A stretch of DNA of 11,020 bases, taken from NCBI GenBank assembly GCA_000388065.2, contig KB932211.1; one strand, 5' to 3'. Below, one piece after another: positions 810-10,944 of the stretch. The DNA comes from Fonticula alba ATCC 38817 (taxonomy: Eukaryota; Protista; Nucleariida). Numbering within the stretch: the first letter of the stretch is position 1; every line of letters begins with the position of its first letter. Both the position numbers and the translations under genes were made by a program. The notes beneath the pieces are model-generated. The model did not search any database, had not been told where the DNA came from, and saw nothing but the letters and a program-made list of their open reading frames with translations.

Positions 810-3800
810 CAGCACCTCCAGCGAGACGGCCACCATGCCGGGGCCCGGCGCGAAGAGCACCAGCTCCAGGGCCTTGCCCGGCTGCAGGGTGGCCGCCTGG
901 AGGGCCACGGCGCCGGCCGGCTCGGGCGCCTGCCCGATGGCCGGCAGCCACAGCCCCGAGGTGCTGGGGATTTCCATCCCCGGCGGGACATCCACAAAGA
1001 CCGCCGGCAGGAGGACGCACGGCCCGGCGGCCCCGGCCGGGCAGTGCATCAGCGACGCGCCGATGAAGGTCCGCGTCAGCAGCAGCAGCACGCTCGGGTA
1101 CCGGGGGTCGCCGGCCGGCAGGGCCAGCCCCTGCATCACCCACTTCATGAGGGTGTGCTGGACCGGCTGCACGGCCCGCGGCAGGGTGCCCAGGCGCTGC
1201 TGCACCGAGCCCAGGTCGATGGACCGGCCGGCCGGCAGCATGTCCCCCGGCACCCGGATGGCCAGCCACTCCTGGTTGGTGACCCGCGAGAGGAACAACT
1301 CCCCCGGGGCCAGGCCCTCCGCCCCCCGGGGCAGGAACACCGGCTCAAAGGCATTGGCCCGGCTCGGCAGGCTCGGCACAAAGTGCCCGAGCATGGTGTT
1401 GGCCCGCGAGTCCCTGCCGGCCAGGCTCATCGGCAGGGCCGTCGCCTTGTAGGACTCCCGGGTCCAGAGGAGCCACTCCCCGGGGCCGGGGTCCGCCCGG
1501 TTGCCGGCGCTCCGCGCCCCCGGGAAGCCCACCATCCCATTGGCCTCGGTGATGACAAACTGCGCCCCCGGCGAGTGGTCCTCCACCCACACGGCCATCA
1601 GGCTGGTGGTGAACATGGCCAGCACCGCGATCCGGGGGCTCGCCCGCCGGAGCCCGGCACACGACCCGGTCGGCAGGTTGTCCAGCCTCGAGGTGTCAAC
1701 CGAGCAGGGCCCCACCCCGACGCACGAGAGCATGATCACCCTCGACTGGCCCACCTCATTGCACAGGGCCACCAGGTAGCGCGTCGTCCCCTCATAGAGG
1801 AAGGGCCCGATCTCGGCCGACGCCTTGACCGGGGACTCCAGCCCCGGCGCGAAGAGGACCACCTCCCGCGCGGGCGGCCCGCCCGGCCGGGCCAGGTCCC
1901 CGGTCGGCATGAGGAAGGTCCGTCGGTCGGCCGTGAAGAGCAGCACCTGCTGGCTGGCCCCGGAGGCCGTGTCCGCCGACGGGATGACCAGGCTCCCGGT
2001 GGCCGGGTCCACCGACAGCCAGCTCTCCGCGATGGAGGTCACCCGGTCGCCCGGGTCCAGCCCGAGCGCCGGCCGCGCGGCCGGCACCGACAGCCCGATG
2101 CCGGCCGGAGGCGCGGCCGCCGGCCGGCAGGCCCCGGCCATCGGCACGAAGCCGGCCGAGCAGCTGGGCACGCACACGATCCGGCCCTCCGGGCCGGTCG
2201 GCTCCAGCAGCAAGTCCTCCGTGCACAGGAGACAGTGCTCCGCATTGCAAGTCCGGCAATTGGCCGCCGCGCAGGGCCGGCACGCGTGGCCCGCCCCGGA
2301 GAAGGGGACCTCCCCTGGGTCGGCCGGGCACACGGGCACACGGGCAAGGAGCCCCGGGATGCAGGCACGTCAGCGCGGGCACACTCGCGCCGGAGCAGGC
2401 GCCGAGGGGCAACGGNNNNNNNNNNNNNNNNNNNNNNNNNNNNNNNNNNNNNNNNNNNNNNNNNNNNNNNNNNNNNNNNNNNNNNNNNNNNNNNNNNNNN
2501 NNNNNNNNNNNNNNNNNNNNNNNNNNNNNNNNNNNNNNNNNNNNNNNNNNNNNNNNNNNNNNNNNNNNNNNNNNNNNNNNNNNNNNNNNNNNNNNNNNNN
2601 NNNNNNNNNNGGGGGGGGGGGGGGGGGGGACATGCCACGCACCGGCCGGCCGGTCAAGATACCACCCCTCGGCGCACCCGGCGCACAGGTGATCCGGCGA
2701 TGTGAAGGGCGACTCGGCGTGGCCCGCGGCGCAGGTCCACCCGGCCGGCGAGCCGGTCGTCACGGTGTCACTGTCGCACCGGATGCTGCCATCCTCCTGG
2801 CAGCCAAAGGTCCGGGCCTCGAAGAGCACCAACTCCCCGAAGACCAAGGCCCAGATGCCGGTGGAGTTGAGGCCCACCCGGAGCTGGACCAGTTGCAAGT
2901 CCCAGACATTGTCCACAACCGGCGGCAGGATCACCCGGCGCCAGGACAGCTGGGCATCCTGGCTGGTGAGCCGCCACAGCCGGTCGCGCGGATCCCCCAC
3001 GTCGGGCACCACCAGGTAGACGGGCTGCGGGTGGTTGCCGGTGGCGGCCGCCGGGGCCGCCAGCAGCCAACCGCCGGACGCCGGCAGCCCGGTCGGCAAC
3101 TCGAGGAACACCGTGCCGGAGCCCTGCAGTATGCCGGCGCACGGCTCCATGCTCAGTTGGCCATTGGCCAGGAGCATGACCAAATCCCCGGACAGCTGGC
3201 AGTCGCCGATCGGCGGCACGACCCGCGTGACAACCGCGCTCAGGATGTCCGCCTCCATGGAGCTGGCGGACCAGGGCACCGACCCCTGCTGGTCGACTGC
3301 CAGCCGCAGGATGTTCGGGCCCCAGTACATGTAGAAGGAGCCCCTGATGCCGGGGACCGCCTGCGCCGAGCCCATGAAGGTCGGCAGTTCGTGGCTCACC
3401 GGGTCCAGCCCGTCCCGGTGCAGGGTGCCCAGGTAGATGGACTGGCTCTGGCCCGGCATGCCGGTCGCGCCCAGCAGCAGGACCTCCCCCTCCGAGAAGG
3501 CCACCCCGGCCAGGAGCTCGGTGTTCGGCACCGGCAGCGGGTGTTCCTCGGCGTGCGTCCAGAAGCCGACCGTGTGCGGCGTAACTGCCACCAGGGTCGG
3601 CAGGGTCCCGTCCAGCGGCGCCAGCGCCATGACCGAGAGGCTGCCGGGGCAGTCCGGCCGCCCGCAGGACAGGACGTATGACGCGCTGCCGAAGAAGACG
3701 CCCCAGCGGACCTCCGGCAGCTTGTCCAGCAGGTCAATCTGCGGCATGAGGTTGAACGTCGAATCCGACACTCGCGCCATGGCCATCGAGTGGCTCCCGG

Positions 3801-3984
3801 GCCCGGTGGGGAAGGTATACGGCCCGGGGGCCAGGCTGACCGGGCGCGGGGCCGCATGCAGGAAGAGGTCTTGCCCGTGCGAGGACCCCGCCGTCAGCAC
3901 GAGCTGCGGCAGCAGCAGCAGCAGCAGCGTGAGGAGGAGGAGCGGCGCCGGTGGCGCCCGCGGGGCTGGGGCTGGGCCCGGCAT
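1..3984 (-). CDS. Large secreted/cell-surface protein with furin-like Cys-rich repeats, 2 exons (3984-2643, 2314-<1), 3' end outside the window; possibly the ectodomain of a receptor kinase
   Basis: ATG at 3984 starts MPGPAPAPRAPPAPLLLLTLLLLLLPQLVLTAGSSHG. Exon 1 (1342 nt) ends G|gtgcgt. Exon 2 starts after cccag| with GG, giving in-phase ...YLDRPAG/EVPFSGAGHACRPCAAANC. Hand translation of exon 2 is stop-free to position 1 with strongly G/C-ending codons. The ORF track lacks this frame, probably because it has no stop inside the window. No TM or kinase domain is visible, so 'receptor kinase' is inference from family resemblance. Confidence 0.9.
2315..2642 (-). other. Phase-1 intron of gene 1, containing the assembly gap
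   Basis: Donor gtgcgt at 2642, branch-like gctgac (A at 2370), acceptor cccag at 2315. The flanking exon phases match. Confidence 0.8.
2416..2610. other. Assembly gap (195 N) next to a G19 homopolymer (2611-2629)
   Basis: Seen directly. Confidence 1.
3874..3984 (-). other. Signal peptide of gene 1
   Basis: Short N-region with Arg, Leu-rich core LLLLTLLLLLL, then small residues (LTA-GSSHG-QD). Cleavage is likely after A32 or G37. Confidence 0.85.
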
Positions 3985-4032
3985 GGGGGGGGGGGGGGCT
4001 ACCGGACCGTCGACGGGCGGGATCGCTGGCCT

Positions 4033-4213
4033 GTGCGTGTGTAGATGTGTGGATGCGTGTGGGTGTGTGTGTAGATGTGTGGATGCGTGTGTAGATGTGT
4101 GGATGCGTGTGTAGATGTGTGGATGCGTGTGGGTGTGTATGCTTATGTGTGTCCGCGTATGCGCGTGTGTCCGCGTATGCGCGTGTGTCCGCGTATGTGT
4201 AGGCGCGTGTGCG
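4033..4213. repeat. Compound GT-rich minisatellite: 20-bp unit GTAGATGTGTGGATGCGTGT x4 and 18-bp unit GTGTGTCCGCGTATGCGC x~2.8
   Basis: 20-mers at 4041, 4071, 4091 and 4111; 18-mers at 4147, 4165 and a partial copy at 4183. Confidence 0.95.
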
Positions 4214-5800
4214 TTCACCGGGGGAGGAGTCCAGCAGGAGGAGCCCGAGCCAGCGAGCAGAGGCCGCGCCGATGAACAGAGACCCGGGCTGGCCGGCGAC
4301 AGGGCGGGGCGAGGCCGGTGGGAGGCAGGGAGGAAAGAAGGGGGGGAGAGGGGTGCTTCAGCGCCTGACGAGCAAGGCCAGCGCCTCGCCGGTCCGCTTT
4401 CGCTGTCCCGCCATATGCCCCCCCCCCGGGAGAGGGGGCCCGGCCCGGGGTTCGTGCGGGCGCGCGTGTTCGGCGCGCGGAAAAATAGGCCCAGGCCGGG
4501 CCCCGGCGCCACGGGGCCGGCAGACCGGGCGCCGGGGCCCCGGCCCGGCGGCCGCGCATCCACCCCTAGCTGCTCGTCGGTCAGCGGAGTCGTTCGGGCC
4601 CGCGGCGCGCGCCCAGACGCAGAGGGGCACCGCGGACGAGTATTTTCCACCGGGCACCGCCACGCCGGCCCACACAGCGGGCTCCTGAAACATGTCTCTG
4701 CCTTGTTGCAGGCCGGTGCGGCGTGCGGGGTGCCACACGCGCACGCCCGGCTGTGCGGTGGCACCCGCCCGGGGGAGATGCCCACGGGCGGATGTCCCCC
4801 GGCCATGGGCCCGGGCGAGGGCCGGGCCGTGGCGGCCGGCCGGCATCGGGGCCCTCCATGCGGCCGCACGCTGGCGCATCGGGGGCGGCGCCGCGACGGG
4901 CGTCTCCTTGCCCGGCTTGCCCGGCGCCCGGCCAGCGGCGATTGGCGCTGGGTCGCGCCCCGGCCGGCCGGCCGGTGGATCGCCCCCCGTCCCCTGCCGG
5001 GACGCCGGCGCGAGGTGACACCCCCGACGAGGGGGGGGACCGCGCGGCCTGGGGCTGCCCGGCCGCGCCCCTGCCCACCGCGGTCCCCGGGGGCTCTTCG
5101 TGCCTGCCCGCCGGCGCCGGCCCGCGCCCCGCCAGCACCACCACGGCCCGGGGGGTGCCACGCCCAGGGCCCGGAAGCGCTGGACCGCCCCCGCCACAAA
5201 CAAGGGCACCTCCCCCCCCCCCCCCGTGTGGTCCGACGTCGGGGCCTCCGCGCCGGGCGGGTGTCCGCCCGTGCCGGCGCATGGTGCCCGGGCACTGGCC
5301 CACTGCCGCCGCCACGGACCGGACGCCGCTCACCGAATCCCCCCCTCACCCCCTCGGACGGCCGGCGTCACCGCACAGGCCCGAGCACGCGCGCCGCTCC
5401 TGCGGGCCGCCGGGCCTCCGTGAAAAGCGGCCAGGGCCCCACCGAGCGGCGGGAGGCGCAGGCGGCAGACCCGGGCCCGTCGCCGCCGGGCGCCCCCGTG
5501 AGCAGGGCATCCGACGCGGCGCCGGTGCCCCGGCCTGGGTTCGAGCCGCCCAGCGGCCCAGGATGCCGGCGGCGCCGCACGCCCAGACGCAGGCACCCCC
5601 CGCCGGGGCACGAGTGGGGCCCGCCCGGGCCGGGCGCCAGGGCACGAGGCAGGACCCCTCCCGCCGGGGCACATGCCCTCCGCGCCCTCGGAGGGCATGC
5701 CGCCGCTGGGACTTGGCCGCGGCCGCCGGGGCCCCCTCGCCGGCACACGGCACGACGGAAAAGCGAGCACGGCGACCGGGCTGCCCTCCGACAGTGGCGG

Positions 5801-7802: not shown

Positions 7803-7838
7803 GCCCGCCCGCCCGCCCGCCCGCCCGCCCGCCCGCCC
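7803..7838. repeat. (GCCC)9 repeat, i.e. (GGGC)9 on the minus strand, G-quadruplex-capable
   Basis: Nine perfect tetramers seen directly. Confidence 0.95.
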
Positions 7839-8367
7839 GGCCGAGCCACGCCGCTCCGAGCCGACGCGCCGGGCGGCCCTGCACACGCGCACGCGCGCGC
7901 ACACCAGCCGCACTGTCACTGCCCCCGGGCGCCGGCCGGTGCTCGCGCCAGGCACAAAATGAAACACCCACACACATACACCCGCACGCGGAAACACGCC
8001 CACCACTCCGCGGCCCGGGCACAGCGGGGCCCGCCGCGGCGGTCCGAGCCGGAGGGGCGACAGCCCTCGCGCCAGGGCCCAGGGTCGCGTCGCCCCGACA
8101 ACGAAAGGCACGCCGGGCGCATGCCGGCGCACCGGGCCCGGTGGCCCCCCGCCGCCTGCCCTCCGCGACCGAGGGCCCCCCCCCCATGCTCTTGGTGGCA
8201 CTGTGCGCGAGCTCGGCAGGCGAGCGGCCCGGCCGCGCCCCGTCGCGTCCCCCCCCCCCGGCCACAGGCCGGCACCATGATCGCGCAGGCGCGGTGTATT
8301 CGCACGGTAACTCACATGTGGGCGGCCTCCTGCCCCTTCCTTCCAGGCGCCCCGGCGGCCGGGCGGC

Positions 8368-10102
8368 CTAGGCATCGGCATCCATTTCCTGCGGCTCCAC
8401 GCGGAAGGACAGATACAGGAAGGTCGGGTTGTGGTTCTCCTTGAAGTAGATGCCGCGATAAAGCAGGTCCGTGGCCAGGGCGATGTGGATGCGGTTGAGG
8501 CGCTTGGTGGCCGTGCTGTACACCGACAGCGGGGCCGAGCCGGTGATGATGCTCATGATCTGGAAGCGCCCGGTGTGGTTGGCCACCCGCTGCAGGCGCT
8601 GGATGGCGAAGAGCAAGTAAACCAGGGCTGCGCGCCGCGGGCGGTCGCCCCACCGGCCGGGGTCGATGTGCCGGTCGCCGGCCCCCCCACGCCCCCCGGG
8701 ACCGGGCCGAATTCGGACGCCTGTCAGTACGTGCCGGCGGAGTGCCCGATGATTAAGGGGAGCCCCCCCCCCCCCGGCCCGGCCCGGCCGGCCGACAAGT
8801 GTGCGCACCCTCCACCAGGTGCAGCCCCTGGAAGTCCGCCACCCGGGGAAGCTTGTCCAGGATCCGCTCGAAGTCCCACTCGAGGTTGCGGCATTTGAAG
8901 ATCTCGCGCCCTGACTGCCACCGGGCGAGCCGCTGCATACGTGGTCGGGCAAAGGGGGCGGAAGCGGGCACAGTGTCAGGCATGCGGGCAAACAGGGGGC
9001 GCCGGGCCGGCCGCACGCACCAACTCCAGCCGGGCCTGCTGCAGGGCCTCCACGTCCAGGGGCTCCGTGTTGCACAGCTTGTCGTAGTTCTCTTGCATGG
9101 CCTCCAGCGGCTTGCGCAGCCTCGTGTACAGCGTCTGCACGGACGACGGCGAGGGCCGCCAGTGGAGCACCCGGTCGGGCAGCTCGGAGATGAGGCCGTC
9201 CGTGCGGCGCTGGTCCAGGAGCTTCAGGATGTGCTTGATGTTGCTCGCGGTGTAGCACAGGTACATGCCCGGGCTGTCGCGATTGTATGCCGTCATGATG
9301 AACCGCTCGAAGGAGGGGCCCAGGTGCAGCGGGGCTGGCGGCGGGTCGGCCTTCGAGTCGAGCTCCTGCGAGCCTGCCTCGCCGGCGTCGGCCGGGTCCG
9401 GCCCCGGCGGGGCCTTGGGGTCCGCCGCGCCGGGCAGCTCCCCCTGGTGGGGTTCCTGCACGTGGCCGGCCTCGGCCGTGGGGCCGGCCGGCTGCTCCTC
9501 GCCCGGGGGCCGGACCGCCGCCCGCGCGCCCCACGGCGACTGCCCGAGCACGGTCGAGATCGGCACGAACTTCTGGCGCCGGGCGGCCCGGGGTGCCAGC
9601 AGCGGGCTGGTGCCGCCCGGGGCCGCGGCCTCCGGTGTCGGCTCGGCCGCCGGCGTCGGCGACGCAGGGGCCGGGGGGCTGGCCGCCGGGGCCGGCTCGG
9701 TCTCGCGCGGCCGGGCCGGCCGGACCGTCGGCCGGCTGTCCTCCGCCTCCACCGGCAGCGTCTCATAATGTGTATACAGGCAGCGGTCCTCGAAGCGGCA
9801 CCATCCCTCGGTCAGGTAGGTGTGGCAGGGGTCTGCGCGCCGGGGGGCGGGTCAGCGGCTGCGTGCGGCTGCGGGGTCTATTTGTGCTGATGTGTGCGCG
9901 CGCGGGCGCGCGTAGCCGGGCGGCCCGGCGCCGGCGGAAGGGCGCCCCAACGTACTGCGCGAAACGTCCACCATCGAGGTGCTCCCGGGCACGCCCACCG
10001 AACGGGGGTCCAGCTTGATCTTGTGGTCGTACAGGCAGCTGTCCATGCGGTCGCACCATCCCTCCATGAGGAAGGTATTGCAGGGTTCTTCGTGGGCGCG
10101 AG

Positions 10103-10187
<85 letters not shown>

Positions 10188-10944
10188 CGGGTCAGTATGG
10201 CCGGCCGCGGCCGAGGGCGAGACAGCGAGCCAGGCCGCCCGGTGGCCCAGCCCCATGCCGGAGGGAGGCGCGGGCACCGGGGGCCGCGGCGAGATGGCCC
10301 GGCTTCCCGGCCCCAGGGGGACGTACTGCCGAGTTTGGCCCGGGGCGGGAAGAACACCGGCGGGGGGGCCGCCGGCGCCTCCGGGATGATGACCAGGGTG
10401 TTGCCCGAGCGCTGGGCCGGCTTGCGCGGGGCGGCCTGCCCCGGCTCCGGGCCCGGGGCCTCCGGGATGCTTGCCGGGCGCAGGGTGACCAGGTTGCTGG
10501 CGGCCGGCCGGCGGGCCACAATGCCGAAGGGCCGGGCCACGATGTTCTTGGCCAGCTCCTCGGCGTCGGCCTGGCCGCGTGCGAGGGGTCAGCACCCGGC
10601 TTCGGGTCGGGCCCTCGGGGCATGGGCGGCGGGCGCGTACCTGCGGGATGCCGAGCGGCGTCATGCACGAGATGATGGCCTCGCGCGCGGCGAGGGCATT
10701 TTTGCCGTCCTTCAGCGAGTCGAAGAGGCTCTTCCACACGTCCTCGAGCAGTTGCTGCCGGCGGCCGGGTGCGGGCGTGTGAGTGGCCGGCGGAAGGAAG
10801 CCCTCGGCCGGGCCCGGGGGCCAGCGGCCGCGGCATGTCGGCAGGCGCGTGCGAGTGCGTGTGTGCGCGTACATGGAAGGTGCAGCCCGGCGACAGGGTG
10901 TTGCCTGCCGGCACCAGGATGTCGAACAGCCATTCGGGAGCCAT
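8368..10944 (-). CDS. Tandem CCCH zinc finger / DUF1771-like / Smr-domain protein, 7 exons, 585 aa
   Basis: Exons 10944-10873, 10754-10641, 10570-10327, 10087-9956, 9832-9021, 8932-8809 and 8627-8368 sum to 1758 nt. All introns are GT-AG (118, 70, 239, 123, 88 and 181 nt) with matching phases and CTRAY-like branch motifs. The protein starts MAPEWLFDILVPAGNTLSPGCTFH/QLLEDVWKSLF and ends ..FLYLSFRVEPQEMDADA* (TAG 8370-8368). An unseen upstream exon cannot be excluded. Confidence 0.88.
8404..8842 (-). other. Smr (small MutS-related) domain with degenerate catalytic motifs (split by intron 6)
   Basis: VADFQGLHLVE/ALVYLLFAIQRL..IMSIITGSAPLS..LNRIHIALATDLLYRGIYFKENHNPTFLYLSF follows the Smr layout DLHGLHVxEAxxxL ... 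IITGxGxHS ... L..G..F...N.G.L.V. Confidence 0.8.
8885..9161 (-). other. DUF1771-like helical region (split by intron 5)
   Basis: WRPSPSSVQTLYTRLRKPLEAMQENYDKL..QQARLEL/RLARWQSGREIFKCRN. The W-x6-V-x2-LY-x2-LR start and IF-x2-RN end resemble the region preceding Smr in plant CID7-type and fungal CCCH-Smr proteins. This comparison is from memory; no HMM was run. Confidence 0.6.
9768..9827 (-). other. CCCH zinc finger 2 (C-x8-C-x5-C-x3-H)
   Basis: CHTYLTEGWCRFEDRCLYTH. This frame opens only after the 9833 acceptor and is not shown in the ORF track. Confidence 0.92.
10023..10082 (-). other. CCCH zinc finger 1 (C-x8-C-x5-C-x3-H)
   Basis: CNTFLMEGWCDRMDSCLYDH. Confidence 0.92.
10105..10182. repeat. 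(GT)39 microsatellite in intron 3 of gene 2
   Basis: 78 nt of perfect dinucleotide repeat, seen directly. Confidence 0.98.

What the first reader, a model, noticed from the sequence alone, without database searches (positions are those of the whole stretch)
8404..8842. Smr domain with every nuclease signature residue replaced: probable pseudo-nuclease
Seen: DFQ where active Smr domains have DxH (Q codon 8830-8828), and IITGSAPLS (8550-8524) where they have TGxGxHS. The structural residues (GLH, EA..L, IITG, G..F...N) are kept and the frame is intact across two introns. Established: the DxH and GxG motifs mark endonucleolytically active Smr domains in no-go/nonstop decay. Inference: the fold is retained without catalysis, as an RNA or ribosome-binding module, a decoy, or a regulator of an active paralogue. 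I do not know of a described CCCH-guided dead Smr, but have not searched.
Basis: partly seen in the sequence, partly recalled or inferred. Interest (0 to 1): 0.75.

Follow-up and report, generated by a model that had tools for sequence, protein, structure and literature searches.

The report
Smr-fold domain lacking nuclease motifs
A Fonticula alba gene encodes an RNA-binding zinc-finger protein whose C-terminal Smr nuclease fold is well conserved but lacks the key histidine and loop residues; it is one of four such altered copies beside one normal copy, so it is probably a non-cutting binder.

Summary
The gene is Fonticula alba H696_05434, 585 aa in 7 exons, annotated only as hypothetical.

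- **Smr call:** Pfam and PDB sequence searches do not call an Smr domain. A confident AlphaFold model of residues 400-585 has Smr domains as its three best matches among 48,161 chains (Z 10.0, 9.1, 8.9). The ESM Atlas model agrees.
- **Overstated title:** "Every signature residue replaced" is too strong. The Asp, the first Gly and the Ser are kept. Lost are His (to Gln), the second Gly (to Ala), and Asn-His (to Pro-Leu).
- **Gene family:** the genome holds exactly five such CCCH / DUF1771-like / Smr genes. One is canonical (H696_02406: DLH, TGTGNHS). Four are altered: DFQ twice, DFM and DLM.
- **Constraint:** the Smr part is the best-kept region between the window gene and its twin H696_01010 (82%), while their introns are near shuffle-level identity. 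It is therefore not decaying.

Loss of cleavage is inferred, not shown. Altered Smr domains are already known in plant PPR-SMRs and bacterial MutS2, as are CCCH-Smr fusions. The scan flagged a similar paralogue elsewhere in this genome.

The parts
8368..10944 (-). Whole gene H696_05434 (Fonticula alba), 7 exons, 585 codons. Exons: e1 10944-10873, e2 10754-10641, e3 10570-10327, e4 10087-9956, e5 9832-9021, e6 8932-8809, e7 8627-8368 (stop at 8370-8368).
   Evidence: Exons were read and sum to 585 codons. They are identical to public protein P0001 = XP_009497543.1.
10523..10944 (-). N-terminal four-helix domain (residues 1-78, across exons 1-3), shared by the paralogues. Function unknown.
   Evidence: AF2 model has pLDDT 76-85 over residues 1-78. 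BLASTP against H696_02406 gives 48.5 bits, E 5e-10. No informative PDB match.
10023..10082 (-). CCCH zinc finger 1 (C146-x8-C-x5-C-x3-H165).
   Evidence: Motif scan. Pfam zf-CCCH scores 25.5 bits against a cut-off of 20.5, in 2 stretches, and zf-CCCH_12 matches 139-166.
9768..9827 (-). CCCH zinc finger 2 (C190-x8-C-x5-C-x3-H209).
   Evidence: Pfam zf-CCCH at 187-209.
9522..9581 (-). Short conserved motif (RRQKFVPIS.VL.QSPWGAR) inside the Pro/Ala-rich linker. It is kept in the twin paralogue although the linker around it is only 49% identical.
   Evidence: Alignment; regional identities.
8888..9146 (-). Helical hairpin in front of the Smr fold (residues 417-473; DUF1771-like 'N-extension'), interrupted by intron 9020-8933.
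   Evidence: AF2 helices at 18-43 and 49-74 of the model. 2vkc aligns over model residues 19-178. Atlas structural matches to DUF1771/Smr clusters give TM 0.67-0.73. Pfam DUF1771 is not scored.
8395..8845 (-). Smr-fold domain (residues 488-577), with strand-helix-strand-helix-strand-strand order, interrupted by intron 8808-8628.
   Evidence: AF2 pLDDT is about 90 except in the loop. VIA-align gives Z 10.0 (2vkc), 9.1 (3fau, rmsd 1.6 over 71 residues) and 8.9 (2zqe). Foldseek gives probability 1.00 to the same entries.
8828..8836 (-). D491-F492-Q493, at the place of the DxH motif. Asp is kept and His is replaced by Gln.
   Evidence: A phmmer alignment to N4BP2 places DFQGLH on DLHGLH.
8524..8550 (-). 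I526-ITGSAPLS-534, at the place of (V/I)ITGxGxHS. The second Gly becomes Ala and Asn-His becomes Pro-Leu. The loop after it has low model confidence.
   Evidence: low pLDDT at model residues 135-143.

Best explanation
The gene encodes a 585-residue protein with, in order: an N-terminal four-helix domain, two CCCH zinc fingers, a disordered Pro/Ala-rich linker, a DUF1771-like helical hairpin, and a C-terminal Smr fold. It belongs to a five-gene, lineage-specific family in Fonticula alba that descends from the CCCH-DUF1771-Smr branch of the eukaryotic NONU-1/Cue2/N4BP2 group.

One family member keeps the canonical DLH and TGTGNHS motifs. This gene and three others have lost the His of DxH and have rebuilt the substrate loop.

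Shown here:
- the fold;
- the homology to the canonical paralogue;
- the motif states in all five genes;
- the Smr part being the most conserved region between this gene and its twin.

Inferred: the domain no longer cleaves RNA. It would instead serve as a binding module for RNA or for the small-subunit / collided-ribosome interface that active Smr domains recognise. The tandem CCCH fingers would supply RNA contact. On this reading the protein is a non-cutting adaptor, or a competitor of the single canonical paralogue.
For: Gene model and identity:
- The exon model equals public protein XP_009497543.1 of Fonticula alba.

Fold:
- The AF2 model of residues 400-585 has pLDDT 84.3 and pTM 0.79.
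- An exhaustive structure search puts three Smr domains first among 48,161 chains: 2vkc Z 10.0, 3fau Z 9.1 with rmsd 1.6 over 71/71 residues, and 2zqe Z 8.9. Further Smr or TusA-like entries follow.
- Foldseek agrees.
- The ESM Atlas's own alignment-free model matches DUF1771/Smr clusters at TM 0.67-0.73.

Homology chain:
- P0001 against canonical paralogue P0022: 84.7 bits, E 2e-21 over 195 residues, plus the N-terminal domain at E 5e-10.
- P0022 against P0023: E 4e-13.
- P0023 carries Pfam DUF1771 at 55 bits and Smr at 23.4 bits.
- The intron sits at the same place and phase in all copies.

Family: exactly five loci are found by profile search. Motif states are given.

Constraint:
- Exons are 75-83% identical to the twin, against 55% for shuffled sequence. 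Introns and the 3' flank are at 33-62%, against 32-56% shuffled.
- Both reading frames are open over about 590 codons.
- The Smr part is 82% identical, against 49-76% elsewhere. PRVADFQGLHL and IITGSAPLS are identical in both copies.
- Other-strain DNA contigs show changes in both flanking introns and none in exons 6-7.

Literature:
- DxH to AxA abolishes NONU-1 function.
- Combined D348/H350 changes abolish Cue2 cleavage.
- Bacillus subtilis MutS2 uses an Smr domain with an incomplete DxH motif to bind collided ribosomes without cutting.
Against: - No activity data exist. Single H350A or R402A changes in Cue2 only weakened function.
- The Asp is kept, and G-S-A still fits the looser 'small-x-small' loop pattern described for this fold. 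Residual or altered catalysis therefore cannot be excluded.
- Pfam does not recognise the domain at all. Sequence matches to N4BP2 are not significant (E 0.16-1.2).
- Simple Nei-Gojobori dN/dS against the twin is high: 0.47 in exon 7, 1.0 in exon 6 and 0.81 in exon 5. With GC3 at 0.92-0.95, synonymous change is capped and the ratio is inflated.
- Expression is barely documented. There is one 184-base contig in a run only guessed to be RNA, and no splice joints.
- No orthologue outside this species was found, so the age of the change is unknown.
Confidence: 0.6

Rival explanations
1. It is still an endonuclease. The retained Asp491, with other residues, does the chemistry on RNA selected by the CCCH fingers. 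Candidates are the invariant His496 of GLH, or His517 of the ANH(T/A)G segment, which is specific to the two DFQ copies. The motif change would then reflect altered specificity rather than loss of function.
For: - Asp and the GLH histidine are invariant in all five paralogues.
- The changed motifs are perfectly conserved between the two DFQ copies, as expected for a working site.
- Single-residue Cue2 mutants keep part of their activity.
- NONU-1 D579N remains functional, so the chemistry is not fully understood.
- CCCH-Smr proteins such as Leishmania CSBP are sequence-specific RNases.
Against: - Gln cannot act as a general acid or base.
- This copy lacks both the His350 equivalent and a basic residue at the R402 position, and the loop His is gone.
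- Combined loss abolished Cue2 cleavage.
- Four of five paralogues lost the His, to Gln in one pair and to Met in the other two loci, which looks like relaxed need for that residue.
Confidence: 0.22
2. It acts specifically as a decoy or dominant-negative partner of the canonical paralogue H696_02406. It would occupy the same ribosomal or RNA site, or pair with the paralogue through the shared N-terminal domain, and so tune mRNA cleavage. This is a sub-case of the best explanation.
For: - All five genes share the same architecture and the N-terminal four-helix domain.
- There is one canonical copy against four altered copies.
- In the tree, a long stem is followed by short tips for the DFQ pair. 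This suggests a burst of change and then conservation (weak tree).
Against: - Nothing tested here shows binding between the paralogues or competition. No complex prediction was run, because no binding claim is made.
- The altered copies have two CCCH fingers and the canonical copy has one, which suggests different RNA targets rather than pure competition.
Confidence: 0.15
3. It is a decaying duplicate (pseudogene in the making) or an annotation artefact with no function.
For: - The product is annotated as a hypothetical protein.
- RNA evidence is very thin.
- Crude dN/dS is high.
- No relatives were found outside the species.
Against: - There are seven exons with canonical splice sites and an open frame of 585 codons, and the same holds in the twin.
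- Introns are near shuffle-level identity while exons stay at 75-83%.
- The Smr part is the best-conserved region.
- Other-strain contigs show no changes in exons 6-7 while the flanking introns vary.
- The model is confidently folded.
Confidence: 0.03

Closest known systems
Human N4BP2 (B3BP) Smr domain with its N-terminal extension (PDB 2VKC, 3FAU, 2D9I); functional relatives C. elegans NONU-1 and yeast Cue2
   Same: - Best structural matches: Z 10.0 and 9.1, rmsd 1.6 over the whole 3fau chain.
- They are the only PDB sequence hits, and the motifs line up: DFQGLHLVEAL on DLHGLHVDEAL, and SIITG on SVITG.
- A helical extension (DUF1771) precedes the fold.
   Different: - The His of DxH is Gln, and TGRGNHS is TGSAPLS.
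- Sequence similarity is not significant (E 0.16-1.2), and there is no Pfam Smr or DUF1771 score.
- The targeting domains are two CCCH fingers, not CUE/UBA or a kinase domain.
Own paralogue H696_02406 (P0022), the canonical copy of the Fonticula family
   Same: - Same order of domains, same N-terminal domain and same intron position.
- 30% identity over the last 195 residues, E 2e-21.
   Different: It keeps VVDLHGLH and VITGTGNHS, has one CCCH finger instead of two, and scores weakly for Pfam Smr (17.6 bits).
Leishmania donovani CSBP and other CCCH-Smr fusions noted among NONU-1 homologues
   Same: A CCCH RNA-binding finger is joined to a subfamily-2 Smr domain (PMC3858433; bioRxiv 10.1101/674358).
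   Different: - CSBP has LDxH and TGxG and cleaves RNA, according to the review. The window protein lacks both motifs.
- No sequence comparison with CSBP was made here.
Bacillus subtilis MutS2 Smr domain and other MutS2-clade Smr domains that lost DxH
   Same: The Smr fold is kept while DxH is incomplete or lost. In B. subtilis the domain binds the collided-ribosome interface without cutting mRNA (PMC10897456).
   Different: - MutS2 is bacterial and is fused to an ATPase and a KOW domain.
- Its HGxG loop is conserved, whereas here the loop is changed as well.
Plant PPR-SMR proteins such as pTAC2, EMB2217 and AT2G17033
   Same: - An RNA-binding array is joined to an Smr domain that departs from LDxH and/or TGxG. 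Six of eight Arabidopsis members lack LDxH and three lack TGxG.
- A PPR-SMR chain of the plastid RNA polymerase is among the structural matches (9epc_G, Z 7.9).
   Different: The RNA-binding part is PPR repeats rather than CCCH fingers, the proteins work in plastids, and the lineage is unrelated.

Membership tests
Smr domain (Pfam PF01713) | Score at or above the Pfam gathering cut-off (25.7 bits) | tested here: not met
   - No Smr hit at E<=10 on exon 7, on the whole protein P0001, on P0001:380-585 or on the twin P0021.
- The six-frame genome search with PF01713 found nothing.
- Even the canonical paralogue reaches only 17.6 bits.
Smr domain (Pfam PF01713) | Strand-helix-strand-helix-strand-strand fold that superposes on solved Smr domains | tested here: met
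   - AF2 model with pLDDT 84.
- 2vkc Z 10.0, 3fau Z 9.1 (rmsd 1.6, 71/71 residues) and 2zqe Z 8.9 are ranks 1-3 of 48,161 chains.
- Foldseek gives probability 1.00.
- The Atlas model gives TM 0.67-0.73 to DUF1771/Smr clusters.
- These are predicted structures, not solved ones.
Smr subfamily 2 (eukaryotic N4BP2 / NONU-1 / Cue2 type) | LDxH motif at the end of the first strand | tested here: not met
   The sequence is ADFQ: Asp is kept and His is replaced by Gln493.
Smr subfamily 2 (eukaryotic N4BP2 / NONU-1 / Cue2 type) | TGxG motif (TGxGxHS) in the loop after the second strand | tested here: not met
   The sequence is TGSAPLS: the second Gly is Ala and Asn-His is Pro-Leu.
Smr subfamily 2 (eukaryotic N4BP2 / NONU-1 / Cue2 type) | Common descent with a member that has the motifs | tested here: met
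   - P0001 against P0022: E 2e-21.
- P0022 has DLH and TGTGNHS and matches P0023 at E 4e-13.
- P0023 carries DUF1771 at 55 bits and Smr at 23.4 bits.
- The intron position is shared.
Smr subfamily 2 (eukaryotic N4BP2 / NONU-1 / Cue2 type) | DUF1771 helical extension in front of the Smr fold | tested here: inconclusive
   - Pfam DUF1771 is not scored, either on the protein or in the genome.
- A two-helix hairpin is modelled at residues 417-473.
- 2vkc aligns from model residue 19, and the Atlas matches include DUF1771 clusters.
Smr subfamily 2 (eukaryotic N4BP2 / NONU-1 / Cue2 type) | Endonucleolytic cleavage of RNA at stalled or collided ribosomes | not testable with these tools
   This needs a biochemical or genetic assay.
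CCCH (C3H1) zinc-finger proteins | C-x8-C-x5-C-x3-H fingers scoring above the Pfam cut-off | tested here: met
   PF00642 scores 25.5 bits against a cut-off of 20.5, in two stretches. Both fingers were found by pattern.
Non-cleaving (pseudo-nuclease) Smr domains, as in B. subtilis MutS2 or plant pTAC2 | Smr fold kept with the catalytic motif lost, and the sequence under constraint | tested here: met
   Fold. Motifs. Constraint.
Non-cleaving (pseudo-nuclease) Smr domains, as in B. subtilis MutS2 or plant pTAC2 | Absence of nuclease activity, with binding to ribosome, RNA or a partner complex | not testable with these tools
   Inference only.

The most novel reading that the evidence does not exclude
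Fonticula alba has turned its single ancestral CCCH-Smr surveillance nuclease into a small system. One cutting enzyme remains (H696_02406). Four non-cutting derivatives keep the ribosome- or RNA-docking Smr surface and have gained a second CCCH finger. They would act as competitors or adaptors that decide which stalled or marked mRNAs are cut. This would be a eukaryotic counterpart of the non-cleaving bacterial MutS2 Smr sensor.
Probability: 0.2. Interest if true: 0.55.

Novelty: new variant of a known kind. Interest (0 to 1): 0.4.

Why it matters
Smr nucleases make the first cut in no-go and non-stop mRNA decay. How they dock on collided ribosomes, and how cutting is restrained, is still being worked out.

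This family offers a natural set of one canonical and four motif-altered copies of the same architecture in one small genome. That gives a ready comparison for separating docking from cutting in the eukaryotic Smr fold. It also extends the known cases of non-catalytic Smr domains from plastid and bacterial proteins to a cytosolic-type CCCH family in a close relative of fungi.

There is a practical lesson too. Neither the canonical nor the altered copies are visible to Pfam, partly because an intron splits the domain. Surveys that count Smr genes by Pfam would score this organism as lacking them.

Tried and rejected
- **My own error:** searches used window:8371-8626:- for exon 7, which is one base out of frame. 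Those three results are void. One of the two Atlas look-ups was lost this way. The correct reference is window:8371-8625:-, and the Pfam and PDB searches were repeated.
- **Pfam on exon pieces and on whole proteins:** no Smr or DUF1771 hit for the window gene.
- **Whole-genome six-frame searches with PF01713 and PF08590:** nothing found. This was misleading, because five family members exist.
- **Profile of three exon-7 sequences against the PDB:** not significant; N4BP2 scored E 0.93, below a chance cellulase hit.
- **phmmer of exon 5 against 1.84 billion representatives:** found only the gene's own protein plus unrelated CCCH and low-complexity hits.
- **Word-indexed homologue searches:** found only the twin, the canonical paralogue itself, and one outside relative, P0023.
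- **Metagenome scan with the DFQ-type exon 7:** 307 pattern matches, none confirmed.
- **Genome search with the P0023 Smr part:** nothing.
- **Nei-Gojobori dN/dS:** not usable as a neutrality test at GC3 0.92-0.95. I replaced it with an exon-versus-intron identity comparison.
- **Tree of six exon-7 sequences:** only the DFQ pair is resolved, so it cannot say whether the His was lost once or more often.
- **Apparent variants in exon 7 in a soil metagenome:** these are the twin paralogue mapping across.
- **N-terminal domain:** folded with moderate confidence, but no PDB match.
- **RNA evidence:** one 184-base contig in exon 5, from a run only guessed to be RNA, with no joints.
- **Exon joining:** The spliced protein used from then on is the public record returned.
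- **Complex prediction:** none was run, because I make no binding claim between named proteins.
Full report
**What is in the sequence.** On the minus strand the window carries a seven-exon gene. The exons are 10944-10873, 10754-10641, 10570-10327, 10087-9956, 9832-9021, 8932-8809 and 8627-8368. I read them, and all six introns are GT..AG. The exons sum to 585 codons.

A search with exon 5 returned a public protein of exactly this sequence and length (P0001). It is XP_009497543.1 / H696_05434 of Fonticula alba, named only 'hypothetical protein' or 'C3H1-type domain-containing protein'. From then on I used that public record.

The Gln of DFQ is at 8830-8828 and IITGSAPLS is at 8550-8524. Only one intron (8808-8628) lies inside the Smr part.

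**Is it an Smr domain?** Sequence tools alone say no.
- Pfam gives nothing at E<=10 on the exon pieces, the whole protein or its last 206 residues.
- A six-frame search of the 31.3 Mb genome with PF01713 or DUF1771 finds nothing.
- The only PDB sequence hits for residues 440-585 are the three N4BP2 Smr entries, at E 0.16-1.2. In these, DFQGLHLVEAL lies on DLHGLHVDEAL and SIITG lies on SVITG.

Structure settles it.
- An AlphaFold2 model of residues 400-585 has pLDDT 84.3 and pTM 0.79. It shows two long helices followed by strand-helix-strand-helix-strand-strand.
- In a search of 48,161 representative chains that does not rely on Foldseek, ranks 1-3 are Smr domains: 2vkc Z 10.0, 3fau Z 9.1 (rmsd 1.6 over 71 of 71 residues) and Thermus MutS2 2zqe Z 8.9. 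TusA/SirA-like proteins, a PPR-SMR chain and E. coli YdaL rank lower.
- Foldseek gives the same entries at probability 1.00.
- My alignment contained Smr relatives, so I also checked the ESM Atlas's own alignment-free model. It matches DUF1771/Smr clusters at TM 0.67-0.73.

**The family in this genome.** Searching the genome with exon 7 and then with the canonical copy's last exon found paralogues. Profile searches with both exon alignments find exactly five loci.

| Locus | Gene | DxH position | Loop position |
|---|---|---|---|
| C11 (this window) | H696_05434 | DFQ | TGSAPLS |
| C1 | H696_01010 (P0021, 611 aa) | DFQ | TGSAPLS |
| C3 | H696_02406 (P0022, 645 aa) | DLH | TGTGNHS |
| C19 | (L007) | DFM | TGLAGNAP |
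| C17 (L008) | not looked up | DLM | THASSGML |

Asp and the following G-L are invariant in all five, and the His of GLH is present in each copy.

All copies have the intron at the same place and phase, after the Glu that follows GLH. All carry at least one CCCH finger and a DUF1771-like stretch.

P0001 and P0022 align at E 2e-21 over the last 195 residues and at E 5e-10 over the N-terminal domain. P0022 in turn matches an outside protein, P0023, at E 4e-13. P0023 scores Pfam DUF1771 at 55 bits and Smr at 23.4 bits, and has DLH and TGTGHHS. The ancestral state is therefore canonical.

**Which signature residues are really lost.** Kept are Asp491, Gly529 (the first G of GxG) and Ser534. Lost are His to Gln493, the second Gly to Ala531, and Asn-His to Pro532-Leu533. 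The residue between the glycines, which corresponds to Cue2 R402, is Ser here, but it is Thr in the canonical copy too.

'Every signature residue replaced' is therefore too strong. G-S-A still fits the looser small-x-small loop pattern described for this fold (10.1101/674358).

**Is it under constraint?**
- Against the twin H696_01010, exon DNA is 75-83% identical (shuffled control 55%). The two introns and the 3' flank are at 33-62%, against 32-56% for shuffles.
- Both copies keep open frames and splice sites over about 590 codons.
- The Smr part is the best-conserved region of the protein: 82% identity, against 76% for the N-terminal domain, 57-74% for the fingers and 49% for the linker. PRVADFQGLHL and IITGSAPLS are identical in both copies.
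- In DNA contigs from another sample and another labelled organism, the two flanking introns carry three substitutions and one deletion. Exons 6-7 carry none. The apparent exon-7 variants in one soil contig are the twin paralogue mapping across.
- Simple dN/dS values are high (0.47-1.0). With GC3 at 0.92-0.95, synonymous change is capped, so I do not use them.
- A tree of the last exons resolves only the DFQ pair (100/100). It shows a long stem and short tips, which fits a burst of change followed by conservation. It cannot say whether the His was lost once or several times.

**How it most likely works.**
- *Shown:* two CCCH fingers above the Pfam cut-off, a confident Smr fold with its helical extension, loss of the His and of the loop motif, and constraint on that same surface.
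- *From the literature:* DxH to AxA abolishes NONU-1 function. Combined D348/H350 changes abolish Cue2 cleavage, while single changes only weaken it (PMC6598757). B. subtilis MutS2 uses an Smr domain with an incomplete DxH motif to bind the collided-ribosome interface without cutting (PMC10897456).
- *Inferred:* the window protein no longer cleaves. It uses the Smr surface to dock on RNA or on the small ribosomal subunit, while the CCCH fingers hold RNA. It would then act as an adaptor, or as a competitor of the one canonical copy. I put about 0.6 on this reading, about 0.2 on retained or altered nuclease activity, and a few percent on a decaying gene.

**Comparison with what is known.** The architecture (CCCH, DUF1771-like extension, Smr) is a described variant of the NONU-1/Cue2/N4BP2 group. 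Leishmania CSBP is a studied CCCH-Smr RNase (PMC3858433).

Smr domains without LDxH or TGxG are also described. Six of eight Arabidopsis PPR-SMRs lack LDxH and three lack TGxG, and the MutS2 clade has lost DxH several times. Lineage-specific, fast-evolving expansions of NONU-1 homologues are noted as well.

What has not been described, as far as my searches reach, is this Fonticula family and its one-canonical-plus-four-altered make-up. I therefore rate it a new variant of a known kind, of moderate interest. Another first-stage note flagged a similar 'both motifs altered' CCCH-DUF1771-Smr gene elsewhere in this genome, which agrees with the family picture.

**Limits.**
- There is no activity, binding or solid expression evidence. 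The only RNA hint is one 184-base exon-5 contig in a run guessed to be RNA.
- No orthologue outside the species was found.
- The structures are predictions.
- Three early calls (3, 8, 14) used exon 7 one base out of frame and are void.

Noticed in passing
G000 loci L007 (C19:76365-76880) and L008 (C17:291629-292168): Two further paralogues of the CCCH / DUF1771-like / Smr family. The DxH His is replaced by Met (VDFMGLH, VDLMGLH) and the loops differ (TGLAGNAP, THASSGML). I did not retrieve their annotated proteins.
   Followed up: partly
window 10523-10944 (-), residues 1-78: The N-terminal four-helix domain is shared by at least three family members (E 5e-10 to H696_02406). It has moderate model confidence and no PDB match. 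The precomputed record of the outside relative P0023 lists PF28536 (DUF8432), a family absent from the Pfam copy I could search. BLASTP between the N-termini of P0022 and P0023 found nothing.
   Followed up: partly
window 9522-9581 (-): A 20-residue motif (RRQKFVPIS.VL.QSPWGAR) is almost identical in the twin paralogue, inside an otherwise poorly conserved Pro/Ala-rich linker. It may be a short docking motif.
   Followed up: no
window 10105-10187: A (GT)41 microsatellite, read as (AC)n on the gene strand, fills much of the intron between exons 3 and 4. Reads appear cut there in the laid runs.
   Followed up: no
window 7803-7843: A (GCCC)10 tandem repeat lies about 500 bases downstream of the gene's stop codon, in a region with long G runs.
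   Followed up: no
window about 2410-2615, and 2662-3939 (-): An assembly gap (a run of N) sits inside a long minus-strand open frame (1792-5349). The protein-like part at 2662-3939 has no Pfam match at E<=0.1.
   Followed up: partly
runs X2 (soil metagenome), X11 (compost metagenome), X4 and X7-X9 (organism B): Near-identical DNA of this gene occurs in a soil metagenome and in runs labelled as another organism, and the soil sample also holds the twin paralogue. This suggests close relatives or strains of Fonticula in these samples.
   Followed up: partly
whole genome G000: Pfam-based six-frame searches report no Smr or DUF1771 in this genome, although five family members exist. The phase-1 intron after the GLH..E motif splits the domain, and the family is divergent. 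Pfam-based surveys would therefore wrongly score Fonticula as lacking Smr proteins.
   Followed up: yes
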